Virus record (IMG/VR): IMGVR_UViG_3300044568_003163
Coordinates: 230,035 to 294,034 of that record
Length of the DNA stretch: 64,000 nt
Reading direction: 5' to 3' (one strand)
Under the pieces are notes generated by a model. The model was not told the DNA's origin. It saw nothing but the letters and a program-made list of their open reading frames with translations, and made no database searches. The translations under genes were made by a program, and so were the position numbers. This document shows positions 2,326 to 43,458 of the stretch, one piece after another (the first letter of the stretch is position 1; each line of letters starts with the position of its first letter).

Positions 2326-2689
2326 TTACTTCTAAATTAAATTTTTCAAATATTTTTAAGGCTTCTTCAATGGTAACTTTTATCCAAATGAAAACTTCAC
2401 CATAGGCATTTTCACCTATATTACAGCCACCAAATTCCCAATAATCATCTTCTCTGCTCACATAAGAAGCATTTCGAAAGGAAACTACCCAATGAGGTTT
2501 GTTTGCTTCTATAATATTATATGCTTCTTCGTAGGTTAAGTCACTTGGTTGTCTTTGCCAAACCGAAGGATGCTTTGCAGTTCCTTTCTCATCAACCCAA
2601 AAGTCAAAAGATTTACTCAGTGCATAATCAAAAATCTCCTTAGGGTTGCTAGGGAGATTCTTTATATTTGCATGTTTATAGTGTGACAT
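2315..2689 (-). CDS. Hypothetical protein
   Basis: 124 aa ORF starting 1 nt after the RNase H stop. Confidence 0.65.
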   Translation of the reverse strand: MSHYKHANIKNLPSNPKEIFDYALSKSFDFWVDEKGTAKHPSVWQRQPSDLTYEEAYNIIEANKPHWVVSFRNASYVSREDDYWEFGGCNIGENAYGEVFIWIKVTIEEALKIFEKFNLEVNEY

Positions 2690-2690
2690 A

Positions 2691-3959
2691 TTATTTCATT
2701 AGGTCTTCCCAAAATGATGGATTGAATCCATCACCTGCCGGAGTTGAAGTTATTACTACATCCTTATTTACCATTGGATCGGCTTTTGGCATTGCCGAAC
2801 GGAAAATTCCAGATTCATTAAATGATTCGGCTTTTTCTTTTGTGTATGTGGTACCTTCAAGAATTTTATCTTTGCTCATAAGCGAATGTAAAGCCATTGC
2901 AGAAAACGAACTTAATGGAATAGATTCGATGTGTTCGAACATATCGCTAATAACCTTTTCCGGAATGCAACGTTTATGTAGCATCATTAAATCTCGATTC
3001 AATAACCAACGTTCTTTGATTTCGGCTAATGGTTTGTCGATTTTAATTACTCGTTGAGCAATTGAAACGATTTGGTCGATATATTCTTCGTTAAAGAAAT
3101 GTGATTGATTGATGTAAATTTTATCATCTTTAAATTCGGACATAATTGCAGCAGCATGAGTATCAGTTACTTTGAATGTGCGTTCTTTACCAGATTTATC
3201 AGTTTTAATTGTAGTGTGTAATGGTGGAACGTTATCGCCTGAATCGCCTACTAAGATTTTTCTAAAGACAAATTCATTGACATTGACTTCGTCTAATTTC
3301 ATTTTATTTAAGCGTACAATATCCTTAAGGTGAGATTTTGCATTTGATACAATATCCTTAGGTAAGTTAAAGATATCGGTAGGCATTTCTTCGACTTCAA
3401 TCCATTGTTTAAATCCTGGAAAAACATGAAGGTCTTTGTCGAATTTATTGTAATAAACAGTATTTGCACCTGATGAATTGTCCTTATTTACTAATTGAAG
3501 TAAATCATTATCGCCTGAGATAATTAAAGCATTTTGACCATTTTGATTTAAGTAAGAAGACCAAGCAAATATTAAATCATCGGCTTCGGCACCTTTAACT
3601 CGAGAAATAATAACACCTAGTTTTTCAAGTGCTTTAGCAAATTCATCGTGAACTTCATAAATCATAGACCAATTGATTTCATTGGTTTTGATGCGATTTG
3701 CTTTGTATTCGGCAGCTGGATGATAAGATTTACGCCATGAGCTTGAATCGACGGTATATACGATTCGATGAGTAATTCCTTCGAAACGTTTTATTTCGGC
3801 AGCAAAATCGACAGCTAATTTCCATAGCAATAGATTTTTATCTTCTTCAGGTTCGTCAATAAAATTAAAAGGTTTTCCTTGTTTAATTTTTTGACCGATA
3901 TGAAAAGTTTTATGAAGCCAAAAATTGGCATCGAATTCCAAGGTATATTTACCTGTCAT
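2691..3959 (-). CDS. rnh: T4-like RNase H / 5'-3' flap exonuclease
   Basis: FEN-1 family acidic motifs FDAN, VDSSSWRK, EADD, SGDNDLLQL and GDSGDNVP. Start moved to MTGKY (3959) because a promoter motif lies in the track's extra N-terminus. Confidence 0.88.
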   Translation of the reverse strand: MTGKYTLEFDANFWLHKTFHIGQKIKQGKPFNFIDEPEEDKNLLLWKLAVDFAAEIKRFEGITHRIVYTVDSSSWRKSYHPAAEYKANRIKTNEINWSMIYEVHDEFAKALEKLGVIISRVKGAEADDLIFAWSSYLNQNGQNALIISGDNDLLQLVNKDNSSGANTVYYNKFDKDLHVFPGFKQWIEVEEMPTDIFNLPKDIVSNAKSHLKDIVRLNKMKLDEVNVNEFVFRKILVGDSGDNVPPLHTTIKTDKSGKERTFKVTDTHAAAIMSEFKDDKIYINQSHFFNEEYIDQIVSIAQRVIKIDKPLAEIKERWLLNRDLMMLHKRCIPEKVISDMFEHIESIPLSSFSAMALHSLMSKDKILEGTTYTKEKAESFNESGIFRSAMPKADPMVNKDVVITSTPAGDGFNPSFWEDLMK

Positions 3960-3980
3960 AATGATTTTGTTTAATGTGTT

Positions 3981-3992
3981 ATACAAATATAA
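3981..3992 (-). promoter_or_regulatory. Bacteroidota-type sigma70 -7 element (TATATTTG), putative early promoter
   Basis: Minus strand reads TTATATTTGTAT, matching the TAnnTTTG consensus, about 25 nt upstream of rnh. Confidence 0.55.
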
Positions 3993-4033
3993 CAAAATTA
4001 AGTGTTATATAAAAATGTTTTAATGGAAAGTTA

Positions 4034-4519
4034 TTAACAAATAACAACTGCTCTAGTTCGTGTAGAGTTTACTAAACGATAGGTTAAGTCAATATAAATA
4101 GCTCCAGTATCTCCATTTATGTTTACAATATAATCAGTAGGTCTAATTAATTCCCAGAAGATCGAAGTATTTTCTTCGGTTTCAGGATCTATGAACGCGG
4201 AATTAACTCTCCATAATTGAATTTGAACATCCGCTAAGGAAGGAGCCATCCTTCTACCGATTAAAAATCCTGGAGTATATAGAGATATTTCTGCCGCTTC
4301 GATTATAAGTCTTTGATTTCCTGCAGAAATCCATTCCTTAATAAATTTTGATGTTGCTGCAGTGGATCCAGTAGGTCCAGTAATTCCAGGTAATCCATTT
4401 ATACCGGTTGCTCCTTGCGGACCAGTAGGTCCTTCTGATGATGGTAAGTATACCGGATTTCCAAAAAAATCTACTAGGATTCCATTTATTAAATATACTT
4501 GTTGACTACTTGTAGGCAT
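4034..4519 (-). CDS. Putative virion protein with short collagen-like segment
   Basis: G-X-Y run GPTGPQGATGINGLPGITGPTGS; preceded by late-motif variant GATAGATATAA at 4532-4542. Confidence 0.6.
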   Translation of the reverse strand: MPTSSQQVYLINGILVDFFGNPVYLPSSEGPTGPQGATGINGLPGITGPTGSTAATSKFIKEWISAGNQRLIIEAAEISLYTPGFLIGRRMAPSLADVQIQLWRVNSAFIDPETEENTSIFWELIRPTDYIVNINGDTGAIYIDLTYRLVNSTRTRAVVIC

Positions 4520-5549: not shown

Positions 5550-5951
5550 TTATGAGTTCAGCTCTTGTAAAACTTCCTTAAGATTTCTAGCAGTTCGATC
5601 ATTGTATTTTTGTTGAGAGATTCTATCTCTTTTTTCAATTACTCTATTGAAAAGAGCTTTGACTTCGTCCACTTTTTTCTCTGGTAAATCTACATGATAG
5701 GAAAATTTACCATTTTGAAGAATAATGAATTTGTCGAAAATTTGAACATAGTATTTTGAAGTTTCTACCGTGTATTTTTTCTTGTCGAAGATATAACGTA
5801 AAGCAGTATTAGGTTCACAAATCAATTTATTGACGATCCGCAAACAATCAATTTGTTTATCTTCGGTTAATTCATTATTAGAAACCGTTAATAATTTTAC
5901 AATTTTTCTCTTTACTCTTCGTGCTCTTACTTGTAATCTTACCGGTCTCAT
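5550..5951 (-). CDS. Hypothetical basic protein
   Basis: 133 aa ORF whose start overlaps the upstream stop by 1 nt. Confidence 0.6.
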   Translation of the reverse strand: MRPVRLQVRARRVKRKIVKLLTVSNNELTEDKQIDCLRIVNKLICEPNTALRYIFDKKKYTVETSKYYVQIFDKFIILQNGKFSYHVDLPEKKVDEVKALFNRVIEKRDRISQQKYNDRTARNLKEVLQELNS

Positions 5952-6145
5952 TATTTGTTAATTTTTTCAAATGAGCAAAATAATAAGAAAGCACCTATCA
6001 AAGTAGTGCACATTGCAGTTGCAAGTTCATTAAGGGTACCAGCGAACGGTATGTATTTTTGAGCGGTTCCAGTTAATAAGGAATATGTAACCCAAAACGC
6101 GATTAATGAACCTAAGGCCGGAAAGATGTTGATGGTGATTTTCAT
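5951..6145 (-). CDS. Small membrane protein
   Basis: 64 aa with two hydrophobic helices; directly behind a conserved upstream motif. Confidence 0.65.
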   Translation of the reverse strand: MKITINIFPALGSLIAFWVTYSLLTGTAQKYIPFAGTLNELATAMCTTLIGAFLLFCSFEKINK

Positions 6146-6153
6146 AGTTCTTT

Positions 6154-6178
6154 GTTTTAATTAGATATGTAAATATAA
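6154..6178 (-). promoter_or_regulatory. Putative early promoter block, copy 1
   Basis: TTATATTTACATATCTAATTAAAAC; near-identical copies at 6715-6739 and 7267-7291, each 8 nt upstream of an ATG. Confidence 0.65.
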
Positions 6179-6229: not shown

Positions 6230-6706
6230 TTATGCAGCCTTTTCATATTGGAACAATGCTTTACCCCATATAGGAGCAATTTTCTGGGCAATTCTCTTAC
6301 CGTAAGCTGAGTACAAAATACCTTGATTCCAAAGAAAGTGCTCATAATCATAACCGTATTGTTCTACCGCTCCTTCAGCGATCCAACGTAAGGCAGTAAT
6401 CTCATCATTAGCACCCATTTGGATAGTATTAGTAATAAGGGTTTGGAAGGCTTTATCAGCTTCAAATTCAGCAGCCAATTCCTCTTCACGATTATCAGCA
6501 CAAACCTGTTCGAAACGATCAAAATCAGCCTCTAACTCCTCAGTGGTTAATGCATGTACATTAATAGTACGAGGACGGAAACCATAAGCATCTTTATGGA
6601 AATCCGAATATAAGAGAAGCATATTCTCTCGATGAGACAACTCATAGTTATGAGCTAATTTAGATTCAAGTTCTTTTTGTTCGTGGATTTGTGATTCTGT
6701 CATCAT
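6230..6706 (-). CDS. Phage hypothetical protein (YSDFHKDAYGFRPR motif)
   Basis: 158 aa ORF; motif recalled from T4-like phage hypotheticals; has its own promoter block. Confidence 0.7.
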   Translation of the reverse strand: MMTESQIHEQKELESKLAHNYELSHRENMLLLYSDFHKDAYGFRPRTINVHALTTEELEADFDRFEQVCADNREEELAAEFEADKAFQTLITNTIQMGANDEITALRWIAEGAVEQYGYDYEHFLWNQGILYSAYGKRIAQKIAPIWGKALFQYEKAA

Positions 6707-6714: not shown

Positions 6715-6739
6715 GTTTTAATTAGATATGTAAATTTAA
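6715..6739 (-). promoter_or_regulatory. Putative early promoter block, copy 2
   Basis: TTAAATTTACATATCTAATTAAAAC; one mismatch to copy 1. Confidence 0.65.
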
Positions 6740-6967: not shown

Positions 6968-7258
6968 TTAGTATATGTAGTTAAGAGCAATATTCATAGA
7001 AGTTGAATTGAAATCTGATGGTATTGGTTTGATTACTTCCCAAACTCCATATTTAACGTTTTTGATAAATTCTAATCTTCGTAAATTTGATAGATATTGA
7101 CGAGTACGATATCCAGGATTATTGTTCCATCTCTTCCAATTAGTAACATTTTCGATACCAGTGGTATGTTCGATTAAATCTGATACCTTAAATTGTTGAC
7201 CGTTACGTTCGTTTAAAAATGTTTTAACTGACGTGAATAATGAATTTTGATTTGACAT
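6968..7258 (-). CDS. Hypothetical protein, possible winged-helix DNA-binding domain
   Basis: 96 aa; RTRQYLSNLRRLEFIKNVKYGVWEV resembles a recognition helix plus wing. Confidence 0.55.
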   Translation of the reverse strand: MSNQNSLFTSVKTFLNERNGQQFKVSDLIEHTTGIENVTNWKRWNNNPGYRTRQYLSNLRRLEFIKNVKYGVWEVIKPIPSDFNSTSMNIALNYIY

Positions 7259-7266
7259 AATGTGTA

Positions 7267-7291
7267 GTTTTAATTAGTTATGTAAATATAA
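7267..7291 (-). promoter_or_regulatory. Putative early promoter block, copy 3
   Basis: TTATATTTACATAACTAATTAAAAC; one mismatch to copy 1. Confidence 0.65.
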
Positions 7292-7293
7292 GC

Positions 7294-7323
7294 AAAAAAT
7301 CCGACACTAGGAAATGTCGGATT
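7294..7323 (-). terminator. Rho-independent terminator
   Basis: 9-bp stem AATCCGACA/TGTCGGATT with an 8-nt loop and T-run on the minus strand, 27 nt after the stop of 7351..7578. Confidence 0.75.
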
Positions 7324-7350
7324 AATTATTTTCAAAAAGTTATTAACAAT

Positions 7351-7578
7351 TTATTGTTCGTTAGTAAAGAATTTTGTTACTTGGTCTAAGTTTTCGTTTG
7401 CTACTGAGATGTGGTCTTCTGCCCAATCATGTCCATTCTTTAAGATTTCGTCCATTTTAATAGGATCCATAGCTAAAAGAATTTCAACATTTCTTTTGAT
7501 GGTTTTAAGATTTCCAATTGTCATATAGTTTTCAGCCTTTTCGTTTACAAATTCACTGAATGTAGGTAAGTGTTCCAT
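7351..7578 (-). CDS. Putative internal head protein (CTS-like N-terminus)
   Basis: Starts MEHLPTFSEFVNE. Confidence 0.65.
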   Translation of the reverse strand: MEHLPTFSEFVNEKAENYMTIGNLKTIKRNVEILLAMDPIKMDEILKNGHDWAEDHISVANENLDQVTKFFTNEQ

Positions 7579-7986
7579 TTACTTCAATAATTTTCTAATA
7601 TTTTCAATAACTATTGATCGATGATTGATAACTGCCTGAGCTTCTTTAGGATGTCTTTGCATAAGTTTTATCGTTTCTCTTGCCCAATTTTCTATTTCCT
7701 TTGTTAGCTCAAGAGTTTTAGGCCAGGTTGAATCGTTAACGACATCAAAATCTGGATTACCTTCTAGTGATTCAATTCCAGTTTCTACGCTTTTATCGAT
7801 GTTCGACCAATATCCACCTCCTTTAGAACTTATGATAGTTCCAACTGATACTTTTACTTTTCTAGTTCCTCTGATATTTTTAACTTCAGTGTCTTTATTA
7901 GCAATATATACATTCCAATATTCTCCACCTTTATCTAAAAATGTAGATTCATTTAAGAATTCTTCGTATGTAGGTAGTTTACTCAT
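7579..7986 (-). CDS. Putative internal head protein (CTS-like N-terminus)
   Basis: Starts MSKLPTYEEFLNE. Confidence 0.65.
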   Translation of the reverse strand: MSKLPTYEEFLNESTFLDKGGEYWNVYIANKDTEVKNIRGTRKVKVSVGTIISSKGGGYWSNIDKSVETGIESLEGNPDFDVVNDSTWPKTLELTKEIENWARETIKLMQRHPKEAQAVINHRSIVIENIRKLLK

Positions 7987-9482
7987 TATTTCTTTGTTTT
8001 CTTATTTTCAAATGTTATTCCAGCATGTGCACTTCCTTTAGCTTCACCTGGATGATATTCACCATCAAATGAAGTTACTACGAAAGTTTTATATGGCGAT
8101 ACTGAACAACCAATTCTTTCCATAAATTTACGATTAACTAAAAATTTAGTAGATTTATCTGTTCTATTAACTAATGAAACCTGAACCTCTTTGTAAGTTT
8201 TACCTGCAAATGCAATATCCATTTCAATTATAGGCCTTTCATCTATATCGTTACCAACTTCTGCGTTAGAAATTCCAATTATCTGATGTACGTATTTTTT
8301 GCCGTTCAATTCCCAATTACACTGTTTACCATCTTCGCTAATTTTCATTTTATCATAAGTCATAGAACATGAAAGTGAACCGTTTCCAGTATCAAATTTA
8401 GCAACAACATCACCAATTCCAGGAATTGTAATTACTTCTCTAAATCCAATAACTCTACGAGAACGAATCCAATTTTGTCTATCTGATAGAAAATCGATGA
8501 TGTCTTTAATAACATCTACACCAGTAGCTTTTTTTAATCCTTGTGTACCTGGAGATGAGTTAACTTCCAGTACATAGTTTTTACCTGTTTTCTCATCAAC
8601 GATAATATCAACTCCACACCAATTACAACCTACTGCCTTAGCCGATTCGATTGCAATTCTTTCTTGTTCTGGTGTTAATTTAGTTTTTTCAACAGAACCA
8701 CCTAATGAATAGTTAGTTCTAAAGTCTTTATCGACTTTGTTTCTTCTCATATAACCTAAAAGTACCGAGTCAGTATCTTCTGGTTTAGGCGAATTGAAAC
8801 GTTTAGTTAAAACGTGAATACGTAAGTCATATTCTGATTCGATTTTTTCTTGTATAAGAGTTTCTACAGTTGGATCTACTTTCCATAAAGTTTGTAATAC
8901 TGATTTAAGAGATGCCAATGAATCTATAATAGAAACTCCAATTCCTTGAGAACCAGAAAGCATTTTAAGAATTACAGGAAATTGTCCGCCGATTTGTTCA
9001 ACTGCCGGTTCGATAGAATCTTCTCCATCGACCATTGCCATTTTAGGAACTGGAAGACCAGCATCCATAAGCATTTTCGAAGTAACGTATTTGTTTTCGC
9101 ATGCTAAAACTGAACTTAGTGTGTTTACTACAAAAAAGTTATTGTCTTCTAATTGAGATACAATATCTCGAGTATAAGTATTTCTAACGATTCCTCTACG
9201 AGTTAAAATCGCAGTATCTTCGGAATCAATTTTAAAGGGTTTCTTGGTTTTATCAACGATAGTAAAATAATCTCCATCAGTACTTTTAGTTAACGAACAT
9301 GTGTTAACGTCAATGATACGGAATTCAATTCCACGTTTTTTACATTCTTTCTCAACTGCAGGAACGGTATATGATTCCTCACTGATATTTGAAAGGAGTA
9401 CAACCTTAACAGGATTTTTAGGTGTTGATTTTGTAGCCTCATTAATTACAAATTCGTTAAAGTATGCGAGACGGTTTTTCAT
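7986..9482 (-). CDS. rimK: RimK-family ATP-grasp ligase fused to a RimB-like (retropepsin-type) protease, CTS-like N-terminus
   Basis: ATP-grasp motifs ENKYVTSKML, PVILK...GSQGIGV, LIQEKI, DLRIHV, GVDII and EVNSSPG; C-terminal domain with AKFDTGNG (Asp364). Confidence 0.85.
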   Translation of the reverse strand: MKNRLAYFNEFVINEATKSTPKNPVKVVLLSNISEESYTVPAVEKECKKRGIEFRIIDVNTCSLTKSTDGDYFTIVDKTKKPFKIDSEDTAILTRRGIVRNTYTRDIVSQLEDNNFFVVNTLSSVLACENKYVTSKMLMDAGLPVPKMAMVDGEDSIEPAVEQIGGQFPVILKMLSGSQGIGVSIIDSLASLKSVLQTLWKVDPTVETLIQEKIESEYDLRIHVLTKRFNSPKPEDTDSVLLGYMRRNKVDKDFRTNYSLGGSVEKTKLTPEQERIAIESAKAVGCNWCGVDIIVDEKTGKNYVLEVNSSPGTQGLKKATGVDVIKDIIDFLSDRQNWIRSRRVIGFREVITIPGIGDVVAKFDTGNGSLSCSMTYDKMKISEDGKQCNWELNGKKYVHQIIGISNAEVGNDIDERPIIEMDIAFAGKTYKEVQVSLVNRTDKSTKFLVNRKFMERIGCSVSPYKTFVVTSFDGEYHPGEAKGSAHAGITFENKKTKK

Positions 9483-9966
9483 TTTTGCGTATATATTTTA
9501 TGAATGATTTCTGATTATCTATCATCATTCTCTTACATTTTTCAGTAAAAGCTAATGAAGATTCAATAACTCGTTGGTCTATTTTTTCGTTACCTTTAAG
9601 GTAGTATTTAAAACATTTTTCACAAGTAAAATTACTTGGAATGTATGTATCTATTCGAGATTGAATCTCTTTATTGCAATAAGCACAGTTCCAATCAAAT
9701 ATCTTATACGAATCTTTTACTAATGAATAAGAAGATATGTCTTTTGACCCTGGTTGAACAAATGGCCTATTCAAATGAGATACTCTTATTCTTCCATCTT
9801 CGATCCTAAAGATGGCATTTATAAAAAGGTCATCATCAGCATATTTCTTAACTACTGGATTTTCCTTTAGTATTCGTTGATGCCTAGGTGGAAGTCCTTT
9901 AAGTACGATTCCATATTTAGTAGGAGTTTTACCTAAGTTCTGTCTTTTTATATGATAATTAGCCAT
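9457..9966 (-). CDS. Hypothetical protein with two CxxC motifs (Zn-binding)
   Basis: CAYC and CEKC. Confidence 0.6.
   Translation of the reverse strand: MANYHIKRQNLGKTPTKYGIVLKGLPPRHQRILKENPVVKKYADDDLFINAIFRIEDGRIRVSHLNRPFVQPGSKDISSYSLVKDSYKIFDWNCAYCNKEIQSRIDTYIPSNFTCEKCFKYYLKGNEKIDQRVIESSLAFTEKCKRMMIDNQKSFIKYIRKNEKPSRIL
9489..9497 (-). promoter_or_regulatory. Putative late promoter (AATATATAC) upstream of the RimK fusion
   Basis: Same 9-mer as upstream of the portal gene (18780-18788); 6 nt before the ATG, inside the end of the upstream ORF. Confidence 0.4.
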
Positions 9967-12070
9967 TTATAGGATATTCATTCCATAAATTATTTAATCG
10001 TTCCTCTGCTAATGAAAGTATTGCGGATATTGTCCATAAATCAGTAGAATTACCTTCTTCGGCAGTTTCTTTATATTTATCGATAGCTGCTTTAGCTATA
10101 TCTAAATTAGCTTGAATTTTATCTACTTCAGTTTGTAGGATTTCCTTTTTAGCTTCATCGGTTTCATTCTTAAGCTCTTCTTTCTTTGAATCTAATCCGG
10201 TTTTGATTGCATCGTACTTTTCAGTTGCAGTACGAAGTTTAAATTCTTCGATAGTTTCTGTTTGTTCTTCTTCAGGAGCTTCTTTAGGAGATTCACTAGT
10301 AGCTTTCTCTAATTTTTCTGGATCAGTCTTTTTTGCTGATGCTTCACCTTGCTTTTCTGCTTCGTCTGACTTTTTTTCTAAGTCCTTCATCATTTCTATA
10401 GCCTTGTCTAATTGACCTTTAAGAGCTTTTTTCTTTTTATCACTAGGAATTAAAGTAGCAAGTTGAGTAAGAAATTCAACACGATTTTTAGCACGTTGTT
10501 TCGATATGTACAACCACGAAAAGAAATTAGCTTTACCTAATAGACCTCCAACTAATTCGTTGGTAGCATCTTTTTGATTTTCTACTGCTGAATCAATATC
10601 TTTCAATTGAGAAACATATGAATCGGTAGCAATTTCTACTTGTTCTCTAAAAGCTTCAAGTTTTTCTTCGTCAGTCATATCCGTATCTTCGCTTTTGAAA
10701 TTATCTTTAACGTCATCAACTTCTACTTGTGCCTTTCTTTTAGCAGTAGCCGCATCAGATATTTCCTTTTCTAGAGCTCTAATTTCAGCAGCATCTTCTT
10801 TTGGATCTAAATTAGCCTTTTCTTTTCTAAGTCTATTAAGTTTTTTATCGGCATTAGATAAATTAGACTTAGCTTGCTCTAATTTTTCTTTTGTCTTTTC
10901 GTTAGACTTTTTAATGTTTTTAAGTTCTTCTTCGTCTGAATCTTCTTCCTCTTCGGCATTTATATCGTCAGCAGTATCATCAGTTGCAGTTGCACCAGTA
11001 GGTCCAGTAGTTCCTTCTGGTTCTTTTTCGGTCGATGTAGTTGATCCGGTAGGACCTGTAGTTCCATCAATTGCAGTAGTTCCTTCTGGTTCCCTTTCAG
11101 AAGATGAAGTTGCACCAGTAGGTCCAGTAGTTCCTTCTGGGTTTTTAACTTCTGGCTCTTCTGCTGGAGTTTCTTCTTGCTTTAATTTTTCTATTTCGGC
11201 TTTAAGATTATCATAAGCTTCTTTTGCAGATTGTTTACCTTCAACAGATGAATTATCTAATTCTAATTTAAGTCGATCTAAATCAGCTAATTTAGACGCA
11301 AGTAAAGCTTCTTTTGCTTTTTTCTCTAATTCGGCTTTATCTAATTGGTCTTCTCCATCTTCTTTAAGATTAGAAATTTCCTTTTTGATTTTAGCAAATT
11401 TTTCATAGTTAACATAAGATTCCTGTCTTGCTTTTGCTATTTTCTTAGCGTCATTAGCATCGTCAGCCTTCTTAATGTCTTTCTGTTCAGCAGATAATTT
11501 AGCATTTTCTGCTTGATATTTTTTATGAGTTACTTCTAATTCTCGTCTCTTTTCTGGATCGTCGACAACAGAAGTTATTTTTTTCTTAATTGATTGAATT
11601 TCGTCTTTAACCTTAGCCTTAATTTTACTAATCTTTTCTAATTTATCAGTATCTGAAGCACCTTTAGGTTGTGGAGTAGTTTTAGGTTCAGTTGGTTTAG
11701 GAGTTTCCTTTGCCTTAGGTTCTACCTTAGGCTTAGGTGCATCTTTTTTCTTTGGTTCAACTTTGGCTTTCTTTGCAGGAGTTTTATCCGGTGCTTTAGG
11801 TTTAACTTTTTTAGATACCTTCCTAGCTTGTTTTCTTGCTGCTCTTTTTTGTGCAGCAGTTTGAACTTCAACTAAAGCAATATATTGTGGTAGACTTGAA
11901 AAGTCATATTCTTTTAATGATTCAAATACATCTCCTAATGTGGCATCCTCATCGACAAAAATATCGAAATCTTCACATATCGTTTCAAAAAGAGATTCTA
12001 ACAGATCTAAGTATATTTGATCGTTTACTTCTTCTTCGTATTTTTCTAATAAATAGTTGTTTAATTTCAT
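9959..12070 (-). CDS. Large Lys/Glu-rich low-complexity coiled-coil protein, putative head component
   Basis: 703 aa; K/P-rich linker, EGTTGPTG repeats and acidic tracts; downstream of the capsid gene. Confidence 0.7.
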   Translation of the reverse strand: MKLNNYLLEKYEEEVNDQIYLDLLESLFETICEDFDIFVDEDATLGDVFESLKEYDFSSLPQYIALVEVQTAAQKRAARKQARKVSKKVKPKAPDKTPAKKAKVEPKKKDAPKPKVEPKAKETPKPTEPKTTPQPKGASDTDKLEKISKIKAKVKDEIQSIKKKITSVVDDPEKRRELEVTHKKYQAENAKLSAEQKDIKKADDANDAKKIAKARQESYVNYEKFAKIKKEISNLKEDGEDQLDKAELEKKAKEALLASKLADLDRLKLELDNSSVEGKQSAKEAYDNLKAEIEKLKQEETPAEEPEVKNPEGTTGPTGATSSSEREPEGTTAIDGTTGPTGSTTSTEKEPEGTTGPTGATATDDTADDINAEEEEDSDEEELKNIKKSNEKTKEKLEQAKSNLSNADKKLNRLRKEKANLDPKEDAAEIRALEKEISDAATAKRKAQVEVDDVKDNFKSEDTDMTDEEKLEAFREQVEIATDSYVSQLKDIDSAVENQKDATNELVGGLLGKANFFSWLYISKQRAKNRVEFLTQLATLIPSDKKKKALKGQLDKAIEMMKDLEKKSDEAEKQGEASAKKTDPEKLEKATSESPKEAPEEEQTETIEEFKLRTATEKYDAIKTGLDSKKEELKNETDEAKKEILQTEVDKIQANLDIAKAAIDKYKETAEEGNSTDLWTISAILSLAEERLNNLWNEYPING
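10989..11140 (-). repeat. In-frame direct repeats encoding PEGTTGPTGAT
   Basis: Identical 32-mer GTTGCACCAGTAGGTCCAGTAGTTCCTTCTGG at 10989-11020 and 11109-11140, with degenerate partial copies between. Confidence 0.85.
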
Positions 12071-12671: not shown

Positions 12672-12680
12672 TTATATATC
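12672..12680 (-). promoter_or_regulatory. Putative late promoter GATATATAA
   Basis: Recurring intergenic motif just downstream of the capsid terminator. Confidence 0.6.
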
Positions 12681-12695: not shown

Positions 12696-12727
12696 AAAAA
12701 AAGAGCTCTTCGTAAGAAGAGCTCTTT
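12696..12727 (-). terminator. Rho-independent terminator after the major capsid gene
   Basis: Perfect 11-bp inverted repeat AAAGAGCTCTT/AAGAGCTCTTT around CTTACG, followed by a T-run. Confidence 0.85.
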
Positions 12728-12748: not shown

Positions 12749-14371
12749 TTATACTAAAGAACCAAGAAGGTTAGACATAAATACACCTGAAGTGATATAC
12801 ATAGTTTCTGGTTTGAAACCTGCTTCAACTAAAGCGTATCTTGATTTAACAGCTACTTTAGGAGCCATAGTTCCTTCAGCAATTGTTTGTACTGATTCAG
12901 CCATTAAGTAAGGCATGAATACTAAACCTGGAGAGTTACCATCACCTTTACGTCCAACTAAGAAACGAGTATCGTTCCAAGCCATGTTAGGATCGTTGTA
13001 GATAGCAAGACCTGCAACAGTTCCAATTGGGTAAAGTGAACCACTCATTTGGTTAATAGTATTAGCCATAGGAGCAGGAACGAAACCAGCTATATCTTGT
13101 AGGGCAGAACATACTTGACCGTTTGTAACGATGAAAGTAGCTGGACCTCTACGACCTCTAATTGCAATAAGGTTAGCGATTGCAAGGATCTTAGACATAA
13201 TTTTTCTCTGACGAGTTGAAAGATTCTCAGAAGCTGAGTTTGTAACCTCAGAAGCAAGAATAGTTGCAGCTCTAAGAGTAGTATCTTGGATGTAAGCACC
13301 AAAGTTAGTTTGAGTGTTAGCAGATGTACCAGATACAACAATTGAAGTAGCACCAATGTTCAAGAAGAAGTTGATTCCTTGAGAGTTAACAACATTTTTG
13401 TGGTTAGTTTCTCCAAGAGCAAATAATCTAGAAAGGATGTTTTTGTTGATTGATTGAGTCAATTCATTGATAAGTACTGATTCTACTTGAGATACAGCAT
13501 CTACTCCGAATTGTTTCAAATCTTGAACTTGCTCTCTAGTAACAGCAGCTGCAACTTGGAAAGTTTTAGCTTCAACTGATTTGTTGAAAAGACTTAAGTT
13601 CATTACGTTGTCTGGAGTAGACTCACCTAAAGATCTAGAATATGGATCGTTAATATCATCTCCAGTATAATCGTTGTTAGTTAAAGCTTGACCTGAGAAT
13701 CCAGTGATGTGGTCTTCTAAAGCTTTTACTAATTCTACGTTTAATCCAGAAGTAGCACCAGTTACACCTGAGATACCTGAAGCACCTAAGATAGTAGTAA
13801 AAGTTGAAAGGATAGTAGCACCAGAAAGAGTACCTCTAACGTGGAAGATTGGATAACCATCTAAACGAGAAGATCCTACATAAGCAAGAGTAACTCCATT
13901 AGTTGAAGCAGAAGTTCCACCAACTACAAACGAAGGAACTGTAGCAGAACCATAGTTTACTTTGATTAATAATGGAGAATTTGTAGTAGAAGCAGTTTGA
14001 CCACCAGCATATACGAAGTCTAAGTAAGTTAATACTCCCATTGGACCAGGCATTGGTACAACAGGTACTAAGTCAAGACCAATAGTTTGAGCAGCAACTT
14101 GCATTGCTAATGGAAGAAGTGTGTGAGCTTTATCACCTGAACCAGCTTCTTGACCTGGGAAACCAGCTTGAGTACCTGGATCTCCAGGGAAACGAGTTGC
14201 ACCCATACCGTTTACAGAACCTAATTGAGCTAAGCTATTGTTTTCATACAATTCATGATAATGACAGTATTTAGACATCCACTCTACTCTATTACGCTCT
14301 TGAATTCCTGTAGTAGACTCAATGATTGGAGCCCATTTACCGAATATTTCTTGTTCGTTAATTAAATACAT
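12749..14371 (-). CDS. gp23: Major capsid protein (gp23-like)
   Basis: KWAPI, DLVPVVPMPGPMG, SVEAKT, VLINELTQSINK, GLVFMPY and PKVAVKSRYAL motifs; biased codon usage; strong terminator. Confidence 0.95.
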   Translation of the reverse strand: MYLINEQEIFGKWAPIIESTTGIQERNRVEWMSKYCHYHELYENNSLAQLGSVNGMGATRFPGDPGTQAGFPGQEAGSGDKAHTLLPLAMQVAAQTIGLDLVPVVPMPGPMGVLTYLDFVYAGGQTASTTNSPLLIKVNYGSATVPSFVVGGTSASTNGVTLAYVGSSRLDGYPIFHVRGTLSGATILSTFTTILGASGISGVTGATSGLNVELVKALEDHITGFSGQALTNNDYTGDDINDPYSRSLGESTPDNVMNLSLFNKSVEAKTFQVAAAVTREQVQDLKQFGVDAVSQVESVLINELTQSINKNILSRLFALGETNHKNVVNSQGINFFLNIGATSIVVSGTSANTQTNFGAYIQDTTLRAATILASEVTNSASENLSTRQRKIMSKILAIANLIAIRGRRGPATFIVTNGQVCSALQDIAGFVPAPMANTINQMSGSLYPIGTVAGLAIYNDPNMAWNDTRFLVGRKGDGNSPGLVFMPYLMAESVQTIAEGTMAPKVAVKSRYALVEAGFKPETMYITSGVFMSNLLGSLV

Positions 14372-14481: not shown

Positions 14482-15102
14482 TTATAATAAGTTAACCTTT
14501 TCTAAAGATTCTAAGTTAGATTCAATTCCGTCTATTAGATTCGATATTAAAGTTTCGTATTGTTTAACATATTCATCAGTTAATATAGAAGCTCTTTCTG
14601 GATTATTTGCAAACATACTCCAATCAATACCTGAAGGTTTTAATAAAGGAGAATTTTCATCTGCAGCCGGTTTAGAATTTACTGAACCTTTTCTCATTTC
14701 TAACCCAAAATCATTATACCAGAAAGTCATTGCATTTCTTACATCAGTTATGTCTAACCTTGGTTCTTTTGATCGGTTTAAATTAGGAGCAAGAGTTCCG
14801 TAATTTTGATGTTCTTTGACAATTACTTTACGAATTTTAATAAGTTTTGAATATCCCATCATTGGTGAATATTCGATACAAAAAAGAGCTTGACCCTTAG
14901 AATTGTAAAGTTGTACACTTTCATAAGAAGGAGCTGTTTGTATACCATATTTAGAAAATATTCTTTTCAAATCTTTTCCTAGAAAATCTTTTGTGATTTT
15001 CGAAACTTGTTTGGCTATATCTAATTGATTAGGTTCTAACGAAGCTTTTTCATTAAGAATGGATTCATTAATAAATTCAGCAAATGTTAATAAATTCTTC
15101 AT
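14482..15102 (-). CDS. Putative internal head protein (CTS-like N-terminus)
   Basis: Starts MKNLLTFAEFINESILNE; lies between the protease and capsid genes. Confidence 0.7.
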   Translation of the reverse strand: MKNLLTFAEFINESILNEKASLEPNQLDIAKQVSKITKDFLGKDLKRIFSKYGIQTAPSYESVQLYNSKGQALFCIEYSPMMGYSKLIKIRKVIVKEHQNYGTLAPNLNRSKEPRLDITDVRNAMTFWYNDFGLEMRKGSVNSKPAADENSPLLKPSGIDWSMFANNPERASILTDEYVKQYETLISNLIDGIESNLESLEKVNLL

Positions 15103-15173: not shown

Positions 15174-17087
15174 TTATCTGTTAAATCTTCTTCTTAATTC
15201 AGCTTCTACGGTTTCCATGTAATTAGCCGGAGTTTTATATTCTGCAGTTTCATTAACAATTGCTGGTGCAGCACCTTCATTTAATGGAGCATCAATTTTA
15301 ACTGATCTTAAATCTCTAGTAGCCCAGAAATCATCGATTTTATATTGATTATCTAAAACTTTTACTGAAGCTTGAGCCTTAATTGAATTTCTTTGAGATT
15401 CATTTAAGTTATTCCAAGAGTCTTTGTATTTAGCTGGCATATTAGTTAACCAATTTGTAACTGGTCTAAATGCAATAAATGCAGATTCATATAATCTTTC
15501 AGCATCAACTGAACCATAGAATTTGTTATTTTCAAAAACTGCAATAACTTCGTCTTTTTTCTCAGGAGTTAATGCATCAAATTGATTTCTCTTGTTTTCT
15601 GATAGGAAATTCAAGAAGTGTAATTTGTTAGCATCTACTGATTCATTAACAGTTTTTGCATTTTCTAAAATAGTATTTAATTTGTCGGTTAATGTCTTTT
15701 GGAAAGCATCTTCTTCATTACCTTCAATTTTATCTACGATAGTTCTTTTTGGATTTGAATGTAATACTAAGTTTTCGTCGATTGATTGAGTACCTTCTAA
15801 ACCAGTAACTTTACCTTCATTAATTTCTTTAACGATGTGATTAAGATAACCTGCAAGATTTTGTGTATTTTCTTTTAAGTACTCAGTATATTCAATGATT
15901 GATGATGTACCTTCAACAATATAATCGTTATGAGAAATTACATTATCTAATTGCTCATTCATATGTTGTTGATAAGCCCAACGTGAGTTAGATTCATTAG
16001 CAAGATATTTACTAAATTCAATATTTTGATCTGCCTTTTCTGCAACAACTTTAGTATATTCAATACCTCTATCGCTCATTTCAGCAACTAATTTAGTATA
16101 CTCAATTAAGTGGTCAACCGATTCAGAAAGTTTTTCTGAGTAGTTAATTCCTTGATTAGATTTTTCACCAACTAATTCTGCATAATTTTTAACTCTTTCA
16201 AGATTTTCAATGATATAATCATTATGAGAAATTAAGCCATCAACTGATTCTGCTAGTTTTTCAACATAAGAATTAATTTGATTAACTCTTTTTGCAGTTT
16301 CTTCGGTGTAACGTATCAATCCTTCATTAACAGATGAAGAATCTTTAGCTGATGATTCGGTTAAAGACTTTTTAAGATTTTCTACTTCGTTTTTAACATG
16401 TTTAGTATATTCGTTAAAATCTTCAACGGTAATGTATTTTTTAGGATCCATTTTGTCGTTTTTTGTTTCGTTTATTGGGTTTGGGGTTGGTTCTTCTTGT
16501 TGATAGATTAAAACAGGCATATCAGATTCGCTCAAATCAGACTCTATTTCATAGATCTGTGTTAATGAATCGTTGTCTAATCCAAAAGATTCGTTTACTC
16601 TTTTCAATTCGGCATTAGCAAATCCAGGATCTGCAACTAAATCGTAAGTAAACATTTTTTTAATTTTAACATGGCCATTAGATTCAACAACACCGGCAGC
16701 TCTAGAAGAAATATGAAGAGGTACACCAGCATCTACTAATGCCATTGCTTGTTTTCCAGCATCAGTATTAAGTAATCTGATTCTACCAGTAACTTTTTTG
16801 CTAGCTTTATCGTATTGAATGTCTTCAATAATATGTGAAGCATTCTTTAACGATATATCAAAAGATTTAGGGTGGTCAAGTTCTCCAAGAAGTTTATTAC
16901 CTTTAAGTTTTTCTTGTAAGTCTTGTATGTGTGGCATTAACTCAGCTTCATCGTAAATACGATTATTCTTGTTTCTAATGCCTATTTCGGTGAAAACACC
17001 TTCCAACACATATTTATCTCCATCCTTAGAAGATGTAAGATTTCCTTCCGATCTTTCTAATACAAGTAGATATTTATTATTGCTCAT
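15174..17087 (-). CDS. gp21: Prohead protease (gp21-like) fused to a scaffold-like repeat domain
   Basis: N-terminal RNKNNRIY, GELDHP (His), ISSRAAG (Ser) and TYDLVADPGF; long helical C-terminal extension. Confidence 0.9.
   Translation of the reverse strand: MSNNKYLLVLERSEGNLTSSKDGDKYVLEGVFTEIGIRNKNNRIYDEAELMPHIQDLQEKLKGNKLLGELDHPKSFDISLKNASHIIEDIQYDKASKKVTGRIRLLNTDAGKQAMALVDAGVPLHISSRAAGVVESNGHVKIKKMFTYDLVADPGFANAELKRVNESFGLDNDSLTQIYEIESDLSESDMPVLIYQQEEPTPNPINETKNDKMDPKKYITVEDFNEYTKHVKNEVENLKKSLTESSAKDSSSVNEGLIRYTEETAKRVNQINSYVEKLAESVDGLISHNDYIIENLERVKNYAELVGEKSNQGINYSEKLSESVDHLIEYTKLVAEMSDRGIEYTKVVAEKADQNIEFSKYLANESNSRWAYQQHMNEQLDNVISHNDYIVEGTSSIIEYTEYLKENTQNLAGYLNHIVKEINEGKVTGLEGTQSIDENLVLHSNPKRTIVDKIEGNEEDAFQKTLTDKLNTILENAKTVNESVDANKLHFLNFLSENKRNQFDALTPEKKDEVIAVFENNKFYGSVDAERLYESAFIAFRPVTNWLTNMPAKYKDSWNNLNESQRNSIKAQASVKVLDNQYKIDDFWATRDLRSVKIDAPLNEGAAPAIVNETAEYKTPANYMETVEAELRRRFNR
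15810..16313 (-). repeat. Twelve tandem 14-aa repeats in the scaffold domain
   Basis: Units such as SYVEKLAESVDGLI, NYSEKLSESVDHLI, EYTKLVAEMSDRGI and EYTKVVAEKADQNI; SHNDYI occurs twice. Confidence 0.85.
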
Positions 17088-20026: not shown

Positions 20027-20770
20027 TTAGAATTTAGATTTAGCAGTAAACCAATAGATTTCAAAGCCTCCGTATTTCTCTCCCATACATAATACATTCA
20101 TTGTCGAATCAAAAGTTATATAATCATCTGCTTCTGCCTTTGGGAAATCCTTGATTTCCGCACCTCTAAATTTAGATTTCAACGCTTTATATGTGTCATA
20201 TAAATCATCGTCAAAATTTTCATCGAGACCAAATACATCTTTTGGTTCGGCTCCTAAATGTTTACATATTTCTCTTACTAATTCCTGTAACGGTTTGTCA
20301 TCACCTTTCTCATCAATATAAGTTTGAGCATCGAATTCTCCACTTAATTCAGCGATGGCTTTAGCAACACTTAGTTTACCTTCGTTAATCGTAGAAGAAC
20401 TAGAAGTTCTTACTAATCTACGAGAGTTTTTTTTAGAGGTAGAAACACCTTCTAAAACTTGTACAAAACCACCTTTAGCAATAACATCAGCAATTTCAAC
20501 ATCGGTCATCTGAACGTCATTAGCTTTGTCTTCACCATTAAATAAGTGAACTCCATCGGTTACACCTGCATAGTACATGTCAGTGTTAACGTTTCCATCT
20601 ACTGTGATAACATATTCTTTACCAGGTAACAATTCAGAAACTGAAGTTAAAGCTGGACCAGTTGGATCTTGTCCTGTAGTATTTTGTGGGTTGAATCCAT
20701 CAGCATCAGTAGCCTCCTGAATCTTGTAATGTTCGTTTACGAACTCGTCAAATGATAATAATTTTTTCAT
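20027..20770 (-). CDS. Putative internal head protein (CTS-like), two-domain
   Basis: Starts MKKLLSFDEFVNE; ends FTAKSKF like the neighbouring gene. Confidence 0.7.
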   Translation of the reverse strand: MKKLLSFDEFVNEHYKIQEATDADGFNPQNTTGQDPTGPALTSVSELLPGKEYVITVDGNVNTDMYYAGVTDGVHLFNGEDKANDVQMTDVEIADVIAKGGFVQVLEGVSTSKKNSRRLVRTSSSSTINEGKLSVAKAIAELSGEFDAQTYIDEKGDDKPLQELVREICKHLGAEPKDVFGLDENFDDDLYDTYKALKSKFRGAEIKDFPKAEADDYITFDSTMNVLCMGEKYGGFEIYWFTAKSKF

Positions 20771-20795
20771 TTTTAATTTATTGTTGTTTTTATTT

Positions 20796-21203: not shown

Positions 21204-21224
21204 TTGTTGTTTTTGTTTTTATAT

Positions 21225-21749: not shown

Positions 21750-21762
21750 TTTGTTTATTATT

Positions 21763-22122: not shown

Positions 22123-22134
22123 TGATTTGAGGTT

Positions 22135-22356: not shown

Positions 22357-22370
22357 ATTAGAATATGTTT

Positions 22371-24035: not shown

Positions 24036-24063
24036 GTTTTTATATTGGTTTTTTTGTATTTTA

Positions 24064-24741: not shown

Positions 24742-24742
24742 G

Positions 24743-42784: not shown

Positions 42785-42785
42785 A

Positions 42786-43448: not shown

Positions 43449-43458
43449 TGTTATATTT

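What the first reader, a model, noticed from the sequence alone, without database searches (positions are those of the whole stretch)
7986..9482. RimK ligase / RimB-like protease fusion carrying the packaging tag: candidate injected glutamylation writer-eraser
Seen: intact ATP-grasp motifs plus a C-terminal AKFDTGNG protease domain in one chain, with a CTS-like start and a late-type motif (9489-9497). Known: bacterial RimK adds Glu tails to ribosomal protein S6 and can make poly-alpha-glutamate; in Pseudomonas it is paired with the separate protease RimB. Inference: a virion-delivered enzyme that modifies host ribosomes, or phage proteins, immediately after injection. This would be conceptually like T4 Alt but using peptide ligation.
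Basis: partly seen in the sequence, partly recalled or inferred. Interest (0 to 1): 0.82.

Follow-up and report, generated by a model that had tools for sequence, protein, structure and literature searches.

The report
Phage RimK-RimB enzyme with head-packaging leader
A large T4-like phage encodes, inside its head-gene operon, a single protein that joins a glutamate-adding enzyme (RimK) to a glutamate-tail-trimming protease (RimB) behind a short leader like the one T4 uses to load proteins into its capsid, so it is probably a packaged, injected host-modifying enzyme, though packaging and target are untested.

Summary
ORF 7986-9482 (-) is an intact 498-aa protein. Residues about 25-337 are a RimK-family ATP-grasp glutamate ligase: above NCBIfam's curated cutoff, Mg/ATP residues invariant, best structural matches solved RimK. 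Residues about 341-470 are a RimB-like (PF05618) retropepsin domain with invariant D364-T-G.

Its first 15 residues (MKNRLAYFNEFVINE|A) are a variant of a leader carried by about 15 other ORFs in the window. That leader mirrors T4's capsid-targeting sequence MKTYQEFIAE|A. The phage encodes a T4 gp21-type (S77) prohead protease.

The gene sits in a six-gene unit just downstream of the major capsid gene, and this synteny is kept in relatives down to 55% identity. A homologue in Yersinia phage YerA41 was detected in purified particles.

The "late motif" at 9489-9496 is physically present but is not a convincing promoter.

RimB+RimK fusions are already published, in the opposite order (RimBK), and the K-B order is widespread in metagenomes. 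What is new is the packaging leader and head-module context.

Packaging, injection and the S6 target remain inferences. Verdict: new variant of a known kind, moderately high interest.

The parts
7986..9482 (-). Whole ORF, 498 aa: leader + RimK ATP-grasp ligase + RimB-like aspartic peptidase
9438..9482 (-). N-terminal leader, residues 1-15 (MKNRLAYFNEFVINE), with a putative prohead-protease site after E15 (INE|A)
   Evidence: In 121 family sequences: E15 119, N14 109, A16 110, F11 105. Disordered or low-confidence helix in the model. Resembles T4 IPII/IPIII MKTYQEFIAE.
8472..9410 (-). RimK-family ATP-grasp alpha-L-glutamate ligase, residues about 25-337 (pre-ATP-grasp, central and C domains)
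   Evidence: TIGR00768 161 bits above its cutoff. PF08443 1.9e-34. Foldseek top hits are RimK 7qys, 5zct, 5zk6 and 4iwx, target TM 0.84-0.90.
8559..8609 (-). Codons of the Mg/ATP-binding residues D292, E306 and N308 (GVDI ... LEVNSSPG)
   Evidence: Invariant in A1. Aligned to D248/E260/N262 of 7qyr.
8073..8462 (-). RimB-like (PF05618) retropepsin-type aspartic peptidase domain, residues about 341-470
8385..8393 (-). Catalytic D364-T365-G366 codons
   Evidence: Invariant in 58 homologues. Aligned with the DTG of 9g59, 9g58 and 2pma and of a bacterial RimBK.
9489..9496 (-). Present, but inside the upstream ORF and not conserved in the orthologue.
9457..9966 (-). 169-aa CxxC zinc-ribbon-like ORF. 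Its end overlaps the RimK-RimB start by 26 nt, which suggests translational coupling; it is the conserved upstream neighbour.
12672..12679 (-). ATATATAA promoter-like octamer at the head of the six-gene unit
12700..12727 (-). Terminator-like hairpin plus T-run after the major capsid gene (upstream boundary of the unit)
7298..7323 (-). Terminator-like hairpin plus T-run after ORF 7351-7578 (downstream boundary of the unit)
7579..7986 (-). 135-aa ORF with canonical leader MSKLPTYEEFLNE|S; its start overlaps the RimK-RimB stop (ATGA)
7351..7578 (-). 75-aa ORF with canonical leader MEHLPTFSEFVNE|K
15174..17087 (-). Prohead maturation protease (T4 gp21 / Peptidase_S77 type), the enzyme expected to clip the leaders
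   Evidence: phrog_207 2.1e-40. PF03420 on the orthologues.
12749..14371 (-). Major capsid protein (T4 gp23 type), immediately upstream of the unit

Best explanation
The gene encodes a single-chain RimK/RimB system with a head-packaging leader.

Shown:
- A complete RimK-family ATP-grasp ligase is joined to a RimB-like retropepsin domain with its catalytic DTG.
- In front of these is a 15-residue leader of the type shared by about 15 other proteins of this phage, resembling the T4 capsid-targeting sequence.
- The gene sits in the head-gene operon of a phage that has a T4 gp21-type prohead protease.

Inferred:
- The protein is made late.
- The leader takes it into the prohead core.
- The prohead protease removes the leader after E15 (I-N-E|A).
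- The mature enzyme of about 54 kDa stays in the capsid and leaves with the DNA at the next infection.
- In the new host it uses ATP to add alpha-linked glutamates to a protein C-terminus, or to make free poly-alpha-glutamate.
- The fused RimB domain, dimerising within a RimK-type tetramer, trims or paces the glutamate chains, as separate RimB does for Pseudomonas RimK.

By analogy the most likely target is ribosomal protein S6, giving an immediate change in host translation. The target is the weakest step.
For: Domains:
- Family HMMs identify both domains.
- Catalytic residues are invariant.
- The full-length model has pLDDT 83 and its best hits are solved RimK structures.
- The C-terminal domain model has pLDDT 88 and its best hits are PF05618 peptidases, then HIV protease.
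- Profile comparison to the RimB domain of a bacterial RimBK gives 95.7% probability, E = 9.9e-9.

Leader:
- 13 N-terminal and 0 internal strict matches in the window.
- It is conserved as a peptide with synonymous codon variation.
- T4 IPII/IPIII start MKTYQEFIAE.
- In the T4 CTS, residues 4 and 7 direct targeting and residues 8 and 10 direct processing (PMC9026906). These correspond to the aromatic, aromatic, [LIV] and E positions here.
- E15 is kept in 119 of 121 family members.
- An S77 protease is encoded.

Context:
- Terminator-bounded six-gene unit after the capsid gene.
- Same order (gp2, portal, S77, gp23, x, x, 169 aa, this gene) in loci at 70% and 55% identity.

Beyond this clade:
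- The Mosig homologue starts ...PFKNYLEE|A and the Melnitz RimK-only homologue starts ...KFSQFITE|E.
- The cyanophage S-CAM8 RimK next to psbA/psbD has no leader.
- 13 of 88 distant full-length representatives carry a strict leader, against 4 of 1546 internal 30-residue windows.
- YerA41 gene 112 (473 aa, the homologue) is marked as detected in purified particles.

Biochemistry of the parts: RimB is a polyglutamate-specific aspartic endopeptidase that also stimulates RimK, and a natural RimB-RimK hybrid is active (PMC11957791).
Against: - There are no virion data for this phage.
- The YerA41 particle list holds 63 proteins, including ribonucleotide reductase and DNA polymerases, so carry-over is possible. 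There the gene is a middle gene, not in the head module.
- The leader here has one extra residue relative to the canonical in-window motif.
- The ligase is not an equivalog of S6 ligase (90 bits against a 331 cutoff) and scores comparably with MptN, LysX and CofF models, so neither the substrate nor even the amino acid is established.
- A RimK tetramer would have to refold after passing through the tail.
- The motif cited as a late promoter is not conserved.
Confidence: 0.5

Rival explanations
1. A cytoplasmic auxiliary enzyme that is not carried in the virion. It acts late in the producing cell, for example on host S6 or the glutamate pool, like the leaderless RimK genes of cyanophages. On this view the N-terminal motif is a shared family signature with some other role.
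For: - Leaderless RimK homologues exist as ordinary auxiliary genes next to psbA/psbD in cyanophages.
- Leaderless K-B proteins exist (P0251, P0262, P0265, P0268).
- In Mosig and YerA41 the gene lies among replication or nucleotide-metabolism genes, and in YerA41 it is a middle gene.
Against: - The leader is shared by about 15 unrelated small proteins arranged in arrays and by the scaffold-position gene 14482-15102.
- It matches the experimentally defined T4 CTS (PMC9026906).
- It is nearly invariant at the E|A site across the family.
- The gene is embedded in the head operon.
Confidence: 0.2
2. The protein is packaged but acts inside the prohead or capsid on phage components. It might extend the C-terminal glutamates created by the prohead protease (which cuts after Glu), or build polyglutamate as an internal polyanion. 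It would not be a host-directed effector.
For: - S77/gp21-type proteases cut after Glu (PMC9026906), so every cleaved leader or core fragment ends in Glu.
- RimK-family ligases extend C-terminal Glu.
- The gene shares an operon with a 703-aa K/E-rich protein of very variable length and two leader-bearing proteins.
Against: - No precedent was found.
- No protein in the window has a run of 5 or more Glu or a typical ...EE C-terminus, apart from one 93-aa ORF ending YEE.
- An added polyanion next to packaged DNA has no obvious benefit.
- ATP access after head closure is doubtful.
Confidence: 0.1
3. The ATP-grasp domain ligates something other than glutamate onto S6. Candidates are a cofactor-type substrate (MptN/CofF-like), a carrier-protein substrate (LysX/ArgX-like), or another host protein. 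The protease domain would then have a different specificity.
For: - NCBIfam gives MptN 132 bits, LysX 103, CofF 92 and S6 ligase 90, all far below their equivalog cutoffs.
- The conserved, translationally coupled zinc-ribbon neighbour could be a partner.
- Distant relatives are fused to cytidylyltransferase-like domains.
Against: - The best sequence and structure matches are RimK proper.
- The only characterised partner function of the fused PF05618/RimB domain is polyglutamate cleavage and RimK stimulation (PMC11957791).
- The neighbour's C-terminus is not acidic.
Confidence: 0.15

Closest known systems
Pseudomonas RimK / RimB (rimABK operon)
   Same: - Same two catalytic modules: a RimK ATP-grasp alpha-L-glutamate ligase and a RimB retropepsin-like DTG endopeptidase.
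- Best structural matches are P. syringae and P. aeruginosa RimK.
- The catalytic Asp of RimB (D31) corresponds to D364 here.
   Different: - Here the two are one chain, carried by a phage.
- There is no RimA or c-di-GMP partner.
- Identity to RimK is only about 25%.
- It has an N-terminal leader.
- The target is not known.
Bacterial RimBK hybrid (Desulfotalea psychrophila DP2392; mostly Flavobacteriales and Rhodobacterales; PMC11957791)
   Same: It is a natural single-chain fusion of the same two domains, shown to be proteolytically active. A Spirochaetales example (P0269) is detectably related.
   Different: - Domain order is reversed: RimB is N-terminal in RimBK and C-terminal here.
- Identity is only about 29%.
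- RimBK is cellular and has no leader.
T4 internal proteins IPI-III and Alt (capsid-targeting sequence, gp21 processing, injection)
   Same: - A short N-terminal leader with the same residue pattern (T4 MKTYQEFIAE|A; here ...[FY]x[DE]F[VIL]NE|[SA]).
- A gp21-type protease is encoded.
- The leader is shared by many unrelated small proteins.
- Alt is the precedent for an injected host-modifying enzyme.
   Different: - There is no sequence homology beyond the leader.
- The chemistry would be peptide ligation and trimming, not ADP-ribosylation.
- Packaging has not been demonstrated here.
Yersinia phage YerA41 gp112 (YerA41_066), Pelagibacter phage Mosig_00005, Methylophilales phage Melnitz RimK-like protein
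   Same: - Homologues at 33-35% identity over both domains (YerA41, Mosig) or over the ligase only (Melnitz).
- The YerA41 protein was detected in particles.
- Mosig and Melnitz have CTS-like N-termini.
   Different: - They lie in replication or nucleotide-metabolism neighbourhoods; the YerA41 gene is expressed as a middle gene.
- They are annotated only as 'structural protein', 'glutathione synthetase' or 'RimK-like'.
- None has been studied.
Cyanophage 'ribosomal protein S6 glutaminyl transferase' (phrog_2599)
   Same: A phage-borne RimK-family ATP-grasp.
   Different: About 296 aa, with no RimB domain and no leader. It lies among photosynthesis and purine auxiliary genes.

Membership tests
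RimK family alpha-L-glutamate ligase (TIGR00768 / PF08443) | Family HMM score above the curated cutoff | tested here: met
   TIGR00768 161.2 bits against 143.4. PF08443 119.4 bits against 21.
RimK family alpha-L-glutamate ligase (TIGR00768 / PF08443) | ATP-grasp fold with an N-terminal pre-ATP-grasp domain | tested here: met
   The AF2 model's top 21 Foldseek hits are all RimK structures (7qys, 7qyr, 5zct, 5zk6, 4iwx), with target TM-scores of 0.81-0.90. Rimk_N itself scores only 23.4 bits against 26.4.
RimK family alpha-L-glutamate ligase (TIGR00768 / PF08443) | Mg/ATP-binding residues and glycine-rich loop | tested here: met
   K131, K173, R255, D292, E306, N308 and the SGSQGIGV loop are invariant. 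They align to RimK 7qyr.
30S ribosomal protein S6--L-glutamate ligase (equivalog NF007764) | Equivalog-level similarity to E. coli RimK | tested here: not met
   90 bits against a cutoff of 331.
30S ribosomal protein S6--L-glutamate ligase (equivalog NF007764) | Adds glutamate to the C-terminus of S6 | not testable with these tools
   Needs a biochemical assay. The host and its S6 are unknown.
RimB-like peptidase (PF05618) | Family HMM score above the gathering cutoff | tested here: inconclusive
   This protein scores 14.9-18.1 bits against 27. However, 49 of 58 close homologues hit the model, best 1e-8. The family profile hits 9g59 at 2e-9, 9g58 at 4e-7 and 2pma at 4e-4. hhalign to a RimBK RimB domain gives 95.7% probability.
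RimB-like peptidase (PF05618) | Retropepsin-like fold | tested here: met
   The domain model has pLDDT 88. Foldseek gives 9g59 at 9.5e-9, 2pma at 1.9e-8 and 9g58 at 2.7e-7, then HIV-1 protease.
RimB-like peptidase (PF05618) | Catalytic Asp in a D-T/S-G motif | tested here: met
   D364-T365-G366 is invariant in 58 sequences and aligns with the DTG of the solved homologues.
RimB-like peptidase (PF05618) | Cleaves runs of 5-6 or more glutamates and stimulates RimK | not testable with these tools
   The property was defined biochemically for Pseudomonas RimB (PMC11957791). No run of 5 or more Glu is encoded in the window.
RimBK hybrid (Little et al. 2025) | RimB and RimK domains in one polypeptide | tested here: met
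RimBK hybrid (Little et al. 2025) | RimB domain N-terminal to RimK | tested here: not met
   Here RimK is residues about 25-337 and RimB about 341-470. The reverse K-B order is common among metagenomic relatives.
T4-type CTS-bearing packaged head proteins | N-terminal leader of about 10-15 residues with aromatic, aromatic, [LIV] and E at the T4 CTS positions 4, 7, 8 and 10 | tested here: met
   YFNEFVINE|A against T4 TYQEFIAE|A, with one extra residue. Family members such as MMHLKYFSDFVNEA have the canonical spacing.
T4-type CTS-bearing packaged head proteins | Same leader on several unrelated proteins of the same phage | tested here: met
   15-17 further ORFs carry it: 13 strict N-terminal matches and 0 internal.
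T4-type CTS-bearing packaged head proteins | gp21/S77 prohead protease encoded | tested here: met
   ORF 15174-17087 hits phrog_207 at 2.1e-40. The orthologues hit PF03420.
T4-type CTS-bearing packaged head proteins | Protein present in the virion with the leader removed | not testable with these tools
   Only indirect evidence exists: the YerA41 homologue was detected in particle LC-MS.

The most novel reading that the evidence does not exclude
Phages with T4-type head maturation, including this large phage that probably infects Bacteroidota, SAR11 and Methylophilales myophages, and YerA41, package a RimK-RimB glutamylation 'writer-eraser' and inject it with their DNA. Host proteins (S6 or others) would then be polyglutamylated within seconds of infection, before any phage gene is expressed. 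This would be a new chemical class of injected takeover effector.
Probability: 0.35. Interest if true: 0.8.

Novelty: new variant of a known kind. Interest (0 to 1): 0.64.

Why it matters
Injected phage enzymes that rewrite host proteins are known for ADP-ribosylation (T4 Alt) and virion RNA polymerases, but not for peptide ligation.

If this protein is packaged and active, it would link the recently characterised RimK/RimB ribosome-modification system to phage takeover. It would also give a testable function to one member of the large, mostly anonymous class of leader-bearing internal head proteins. Finally, it would suggest that the many RimK-RimB fusions seen in aquatic and gut metagenomes are largely phage cargo.

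The family is abundant: more than 120 close homologues and about 150 clusters at E below 1e-30. Cultured relatives exist (YerA41, Mosig, Melnitz), so the idea can be tested directly.

Tried and rejected
- Close DNA relatives: megablast of 7000-10500 against phage records found nothing, so there is no close cultured relative.
- PHROGs gave only the generic phrog_2599.
- The 'late-type motif' as this gene's promoter was rejected as evidence. It lies inside the upstream ORF, 6 nt from the ATG, and is changed to ATATATCC by a synonymous substitution in the orthologue. The overall count of the octamer is at chance (18 against 16 +/- 4.5); only its placement upstream of genes is non-random.
- Phage-encoded substrates: there are no runs of 5 or more Glu, and no C-terminal EE tails except a 93-aa ORF ending YEE.
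- Phage ribosomal protein S21 (present near the Mosig homologue): none in the window.
- tRNAs: none.
- Pfam on 20 neighbouring and leader-bearing ORFs gave nothing informative except a KTSC domain and weak zinc-finger hits.
- The Atlas search on the 169-aa neighbour was uninformative.
- Recent capture from a host RimBK was rejected. Cellular B-K proteins are only about 29% identical, far below the many K-B relatives.
- DNA hypermodification role, prompted by YerA41's modified thymidine: that modification is described as oligosaccharide-like (PMC9023294), so there is no support.
- Literature searches for packaged RimK or ATP-grasp enzymes found no description.
Full report
**The object.** The window is 32% G+C and all its genes lie on the minus strand. 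ORF 7986-9482 (-) is an uninterrupted 498-codon frame that begins at the first available start codon. The operators' remark about read-through of stops therefore does not apply to it.

**Ligase domain.**
- Pfam gives RimK (PF08443) at 1.9e-34 over residues 129-331, with a weak Rimk_N hit over residues 26-121.
- NCBIfam gives the RimK-family model TIGR00768 at 161.2 bits, above its curated cutoff of 143.4.
- All function-specific equivalogs are far below their cutoffs: MptN 132 against 350, LysX 103 against 276, CofF 92 against 300, and E. coli-type S6 ligase 90 against 331.
- phmmer against PDB sequences finds Pseudomonas and E. coli RimK first, at 2.9e-24 to 1.8e-21. In that alignment D292, E306 and N308 fall on D248, E260 and N262 of 7qyr, and the SGSQGIGV loop falls on EGTQGIGV.
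- These residues, plus K131, K173 and R255, are invariant in an alignment of 58 homologues of 53-81% identity (A1).
- An AlphaFold model built on that alignment has mean pLDDT 83, with residues 1-20 below 50.
- Its best Foldseek hits in the PDB are RimK of P. syringae, E. coli and P. aeruginosa, with target TM-scores of 0.81-0.90.
- The ligase domain therefore looks complete and catalytically competent. Its substrate cannot be read from sequence.

**Peptidase domain.**
- The single sequence only grazes PF05618 (E = 0.025, 14.9 bits against a cutoff of 27). It hits NCBIfam's retropepsin-like RloA2 model at 2.4e-6.
- At family level the assignment is firm. 49 of 58 C-terminal domains hit PF05618, the best at 1e-8.
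- The domain profile (A2) finds the solved PF05618 peptidases 9g59, 9g58 and 2pma at 2e-9, 4e-7 and 4e-4 across the whole domain, with AKFDTG aligned on AKMDTG/AKLDTG.
- A separate model of residues 338-498 has pLDDT 88. It matches these same structures at 9.5e-9 to 3.6e-7 and then dozens of HIV-1 protease entries.
- hhalign of A2 against the N-terminal RimB domain of a bacterial RimB-RimK hybrid (P0269) gives 95.7% probability and E = 9.9e-9.
- D364-T365-G366-N367-G368 are invariant, so D364 is the expected catalytic aspartate.

**What the two domains do elsewhere.**
- Little et al. 2025 (PMC11957791) showed that Pseudomonas RimB is a retropepsin-like endopeptidase with catalytic D31 in a DTG motif.
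- It cleaves runs of about 5-6 or more glutamates. It trims the polyglutamate tail that RimK adds to ribosomal protein S6 (RpsF) and stimulates poly-alpha-glutamate synthesis by RimK.
- The fusion as such is therefore known. Here the order is reversed (RimK then RimB).
- The exhaustive representative search shows that the K-B order is itself widespread: 5127 hits at E of 1e-3 or better and 148 at 1e-30 or better. Many clusters of 29-50% identity align in one stretch over residues about 20-470.
- Pfam confirms the K-B order in P0251, P0262, P0265 and P0268, and the B-K order in P0269.

**The leader.**
- The protein starts MKNRLAYFNEFVINE|ATK.
- In this window, 13 ORFs begin with the strict pattern [FY]x[DE][FYW][LIV]NE within their first residues, and the pattern never occurs internally in 20,527 residues.
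- A looser pattern collects about 16 ORFs, arranged in arrays at 7351-9482, 14482-15102, 20027-25732, 42215-44047 and 51389-53445.
- Codons vary synonymously among the copies, so it is the peptide that is conserved, not a DNA repeat.
- T4 IPIII and IPII start MKTYQEFIAE. This decapeptide is the experimentally defined capsid-targeting sequence. Residues 4 and 7 matter for targeting, and residues 8 and 10 for processing by the gp21 prohead protease (PMC9026906).
- The window motif places aromatic, aromatic, [LIV] and Glu at exactly those positions.
- The RimK-RimB copy has one extra residue (FV-I-NE), but family members such as MMHLKYFSDFVNEA have the canonical spacing.
- Across 121 family sequences, E15 is kept in 119, N14 in 109, A16 in 110 and F11 in 105, while the following linker varies.

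**Head machinery and context.**
- The phage encodes a T4-type head set: portal, gp21/S77 protease, gp23-type capsid protein, gp2 and gp4.
- The capsid protein's nearest database relatives are an uncultured 462-kb phage (56% identity) and the Lak megaphages (36%).
- The gene belongs to a run of six abutting or overlapping ORFs: 12641 to 7351, encoding 189 aa, a 703-aa K/E-rich protein, a 169-aa zinc-ribbon-like protein, RimK-RimB, and two small leader-bearing proteins.
- This run is bracketed by terminator-like hairpins at 12727-12700 and 7323-7298. It is preceded by an ATATATAA octamer at 12672-12679.
- The same order (gp2, portal, S77 protease, gp23, two ORFs, a 167-169-aa ORF, then RimK-RimB, followed by the clamp loader) is found on a 261-kb contig at 70% identity and on a 64-kb contig at 55% identity.

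**The octamer next to the ATG.**
- ATATATA[AC] is non-randomly placed: 8 of 16 minus-strand copies lie within 40 nt upstream of starts (p = 2.6e-7). Its overall count, however, is at chance.
- The copy at 9489-9496 encodes K-Y-I of the upstream protein and lies 6 nt from the ATG. It becomes ATATATCC in the orthologue.
- I do not count it as a promoter for this gene.

**Evidence from other phages.**
- tblastn finds two-domain homologues in Pelagibacter phage Mosig (34.5% identity) and in Yersinia phages YerA41 and GN1 (33.5%). It finds ligase-only homologues in the Melnitz phages and many cyanophages.
- Mosig's protein begins MQVQPFKNYLEE|A and Melnitz's begins TQKFSQFITE|E. Both fit the CTS pattern.
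- The cyanophage S-CAM8 protein starts directly with the ligase fold and lies next to psbA/psbD.
- Among distant representatives, 13 of 88 full-length K-B proteins carry a strict leader in the first 30 residues, against 4 of 1546 internal windows. Many others end their N-terminal extension in [LIM]-x-E-S-K-K.
- In YerA41 the homologue (gene 112, 473 aa, 'putative ribosomal protein modification protein') is a middle gene. It is flagged as detected by LC-MS/MS in purified particles and is annotated 'structural protein' in GenBank.
- That list has 63 proteins, including ribonucleotide reductase, so it is supportive but not decisive.

**Interpretation.**
- The best-supported reading is a head-packaged, protease-processed RimK/RimB single-chain enzyme delivered with the DNA.
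- The biochemical class is well supported. Packaging is a reasoned inference from the leader, the protease, the operon position and one proteomic hint.
- The S6 target is only an analogy.

**Rivals:**
- A non-packaged late cytoplasmic enzyme.
- An enzyme acting inside the prohead on Glu-terminated cleavage products.
- A ligase with another substrate.

Nothing in the window looks like an encoded substrate: there are no runs of 5 or more Glu and no acidic C-terminal tails.

**Host and literature.** Relatives turn up in metagenome bins labelled Saprospirales, Paludibacteraceae, Flavobacteriales and Bacteroidetes, several from lakes. This is a weak hint of a Bacteroidota host. I found no paper describing a packaged RimK or ATP-grasp enzyme.

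**Verdict.** This is a new variant of a known kind. A published two-enzyme system, already known as a fusion in the other order, appears here on a phage with a T4-type packaging leader in the head operon. It is worth an experiment, because cultured relatives exist.

Noticed in passing
window 7351-9482, 14482-15102, 20027-25732, 42215-44047, 51389-53445 (all minus strand): About 16 ORFs in arrays share the T4-CTS-like leader M-K-x-(L)-x-[TS]-[FY]-x-[ED]-[FWY]-[VIL]-N-E-[SAN]. Nearly all lack any Pfam domain; one has a KTSC domain (51389-51715). This would be an unusually large set of presumptive internal head proteins.
   Followed up: partly
window 6154-6178, 6715-6739, 7267-7291 (minus strand): A 25-nt element, TTATATTTACATATCTAATTAAAAC, occurs three times with 1 mismatch or fewer (none expected by chance). 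Each copy lies about 10 nt upstream of a small gene (5951-6145, 6230-6706, 6968-7258). It is probably a promoter of a different class from the ATATATA[AC] sites.
   Followed up: partly
window 9457-9966 (-); L004 9523-10026; L019 7495-8004: A conserved 167-169-aa CxxC zinc-ribbon-like protein always sits immediately upstream of RimK-RimB and overlaps its start (26 nt in the window and L004, 4 nt in L019). It could be a functional partner. No family assignment was obtained.
   Followed up: partly
window 9959-12070 (-): A 703-aa lysine/glutamate-rich low-complexity protein with PEGTTGPTGAT-type repeats, with no family hit. The protein at the same position is 997 aa in L004 and 335 aa in L019, so its length is very variable. 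It may be a scaffold or internal head protein.
   Followed up: no
proteins P0139, P0159, P0163, P0167, P0181, P0184, P0185, P0196, P0199, P0206, P0221, P0245, P0264: Distant RimK-RimB relatives of 700-1300 aa carry an N-terminal FGRFxPPTxGHE nucleotidyltransferase motif. In P0185 the extra domains are CTP_transf_like and DUF6267. This extended architecture is unexplained.
   Followed up: partly
window 15174-17087 (-): The prohead protease is 637 aa, but the S77-type match covers only residues about 17-294. The C-terminal half, about 340 residues, has no assignment.
   Followed up: no
window 12749-14371 (-): The major capsid protein is most similar to that of an uncultured 462-kb phage (LR756500, 56%) and to Lak Prevotella megaphages (36%). 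Close homologues of the RimK-RimB gene lie on contigs up to 261 kb, so the window probably comes from a jumbo phage.
   Followed up: partly
L002 2503-2712 (Pelagibacter phage Mosig): Mosig encodes a ribosomal protein S21 about 5 kb from its RimK-RimB homologue, with 10 annotated genes between them. S21, like S6, is a protein of the 30S subunit. No S21 is present in this window.
   Followed up: partly
L012 (uncultured Firmicutes MAG, 410-kb contig), 2578-4221: A 547-aa K-B homologue (30% identity) sits among thymidylate-synthase-like and nucleotide-kinase-like genes. It starts MKKFKEHL..., like window ORF 52783-53145 (MKTFKEHL...). The context looks phage-like, and the 410-kb contig may be a megaphage rather than a chromosome.
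   Followed up: no
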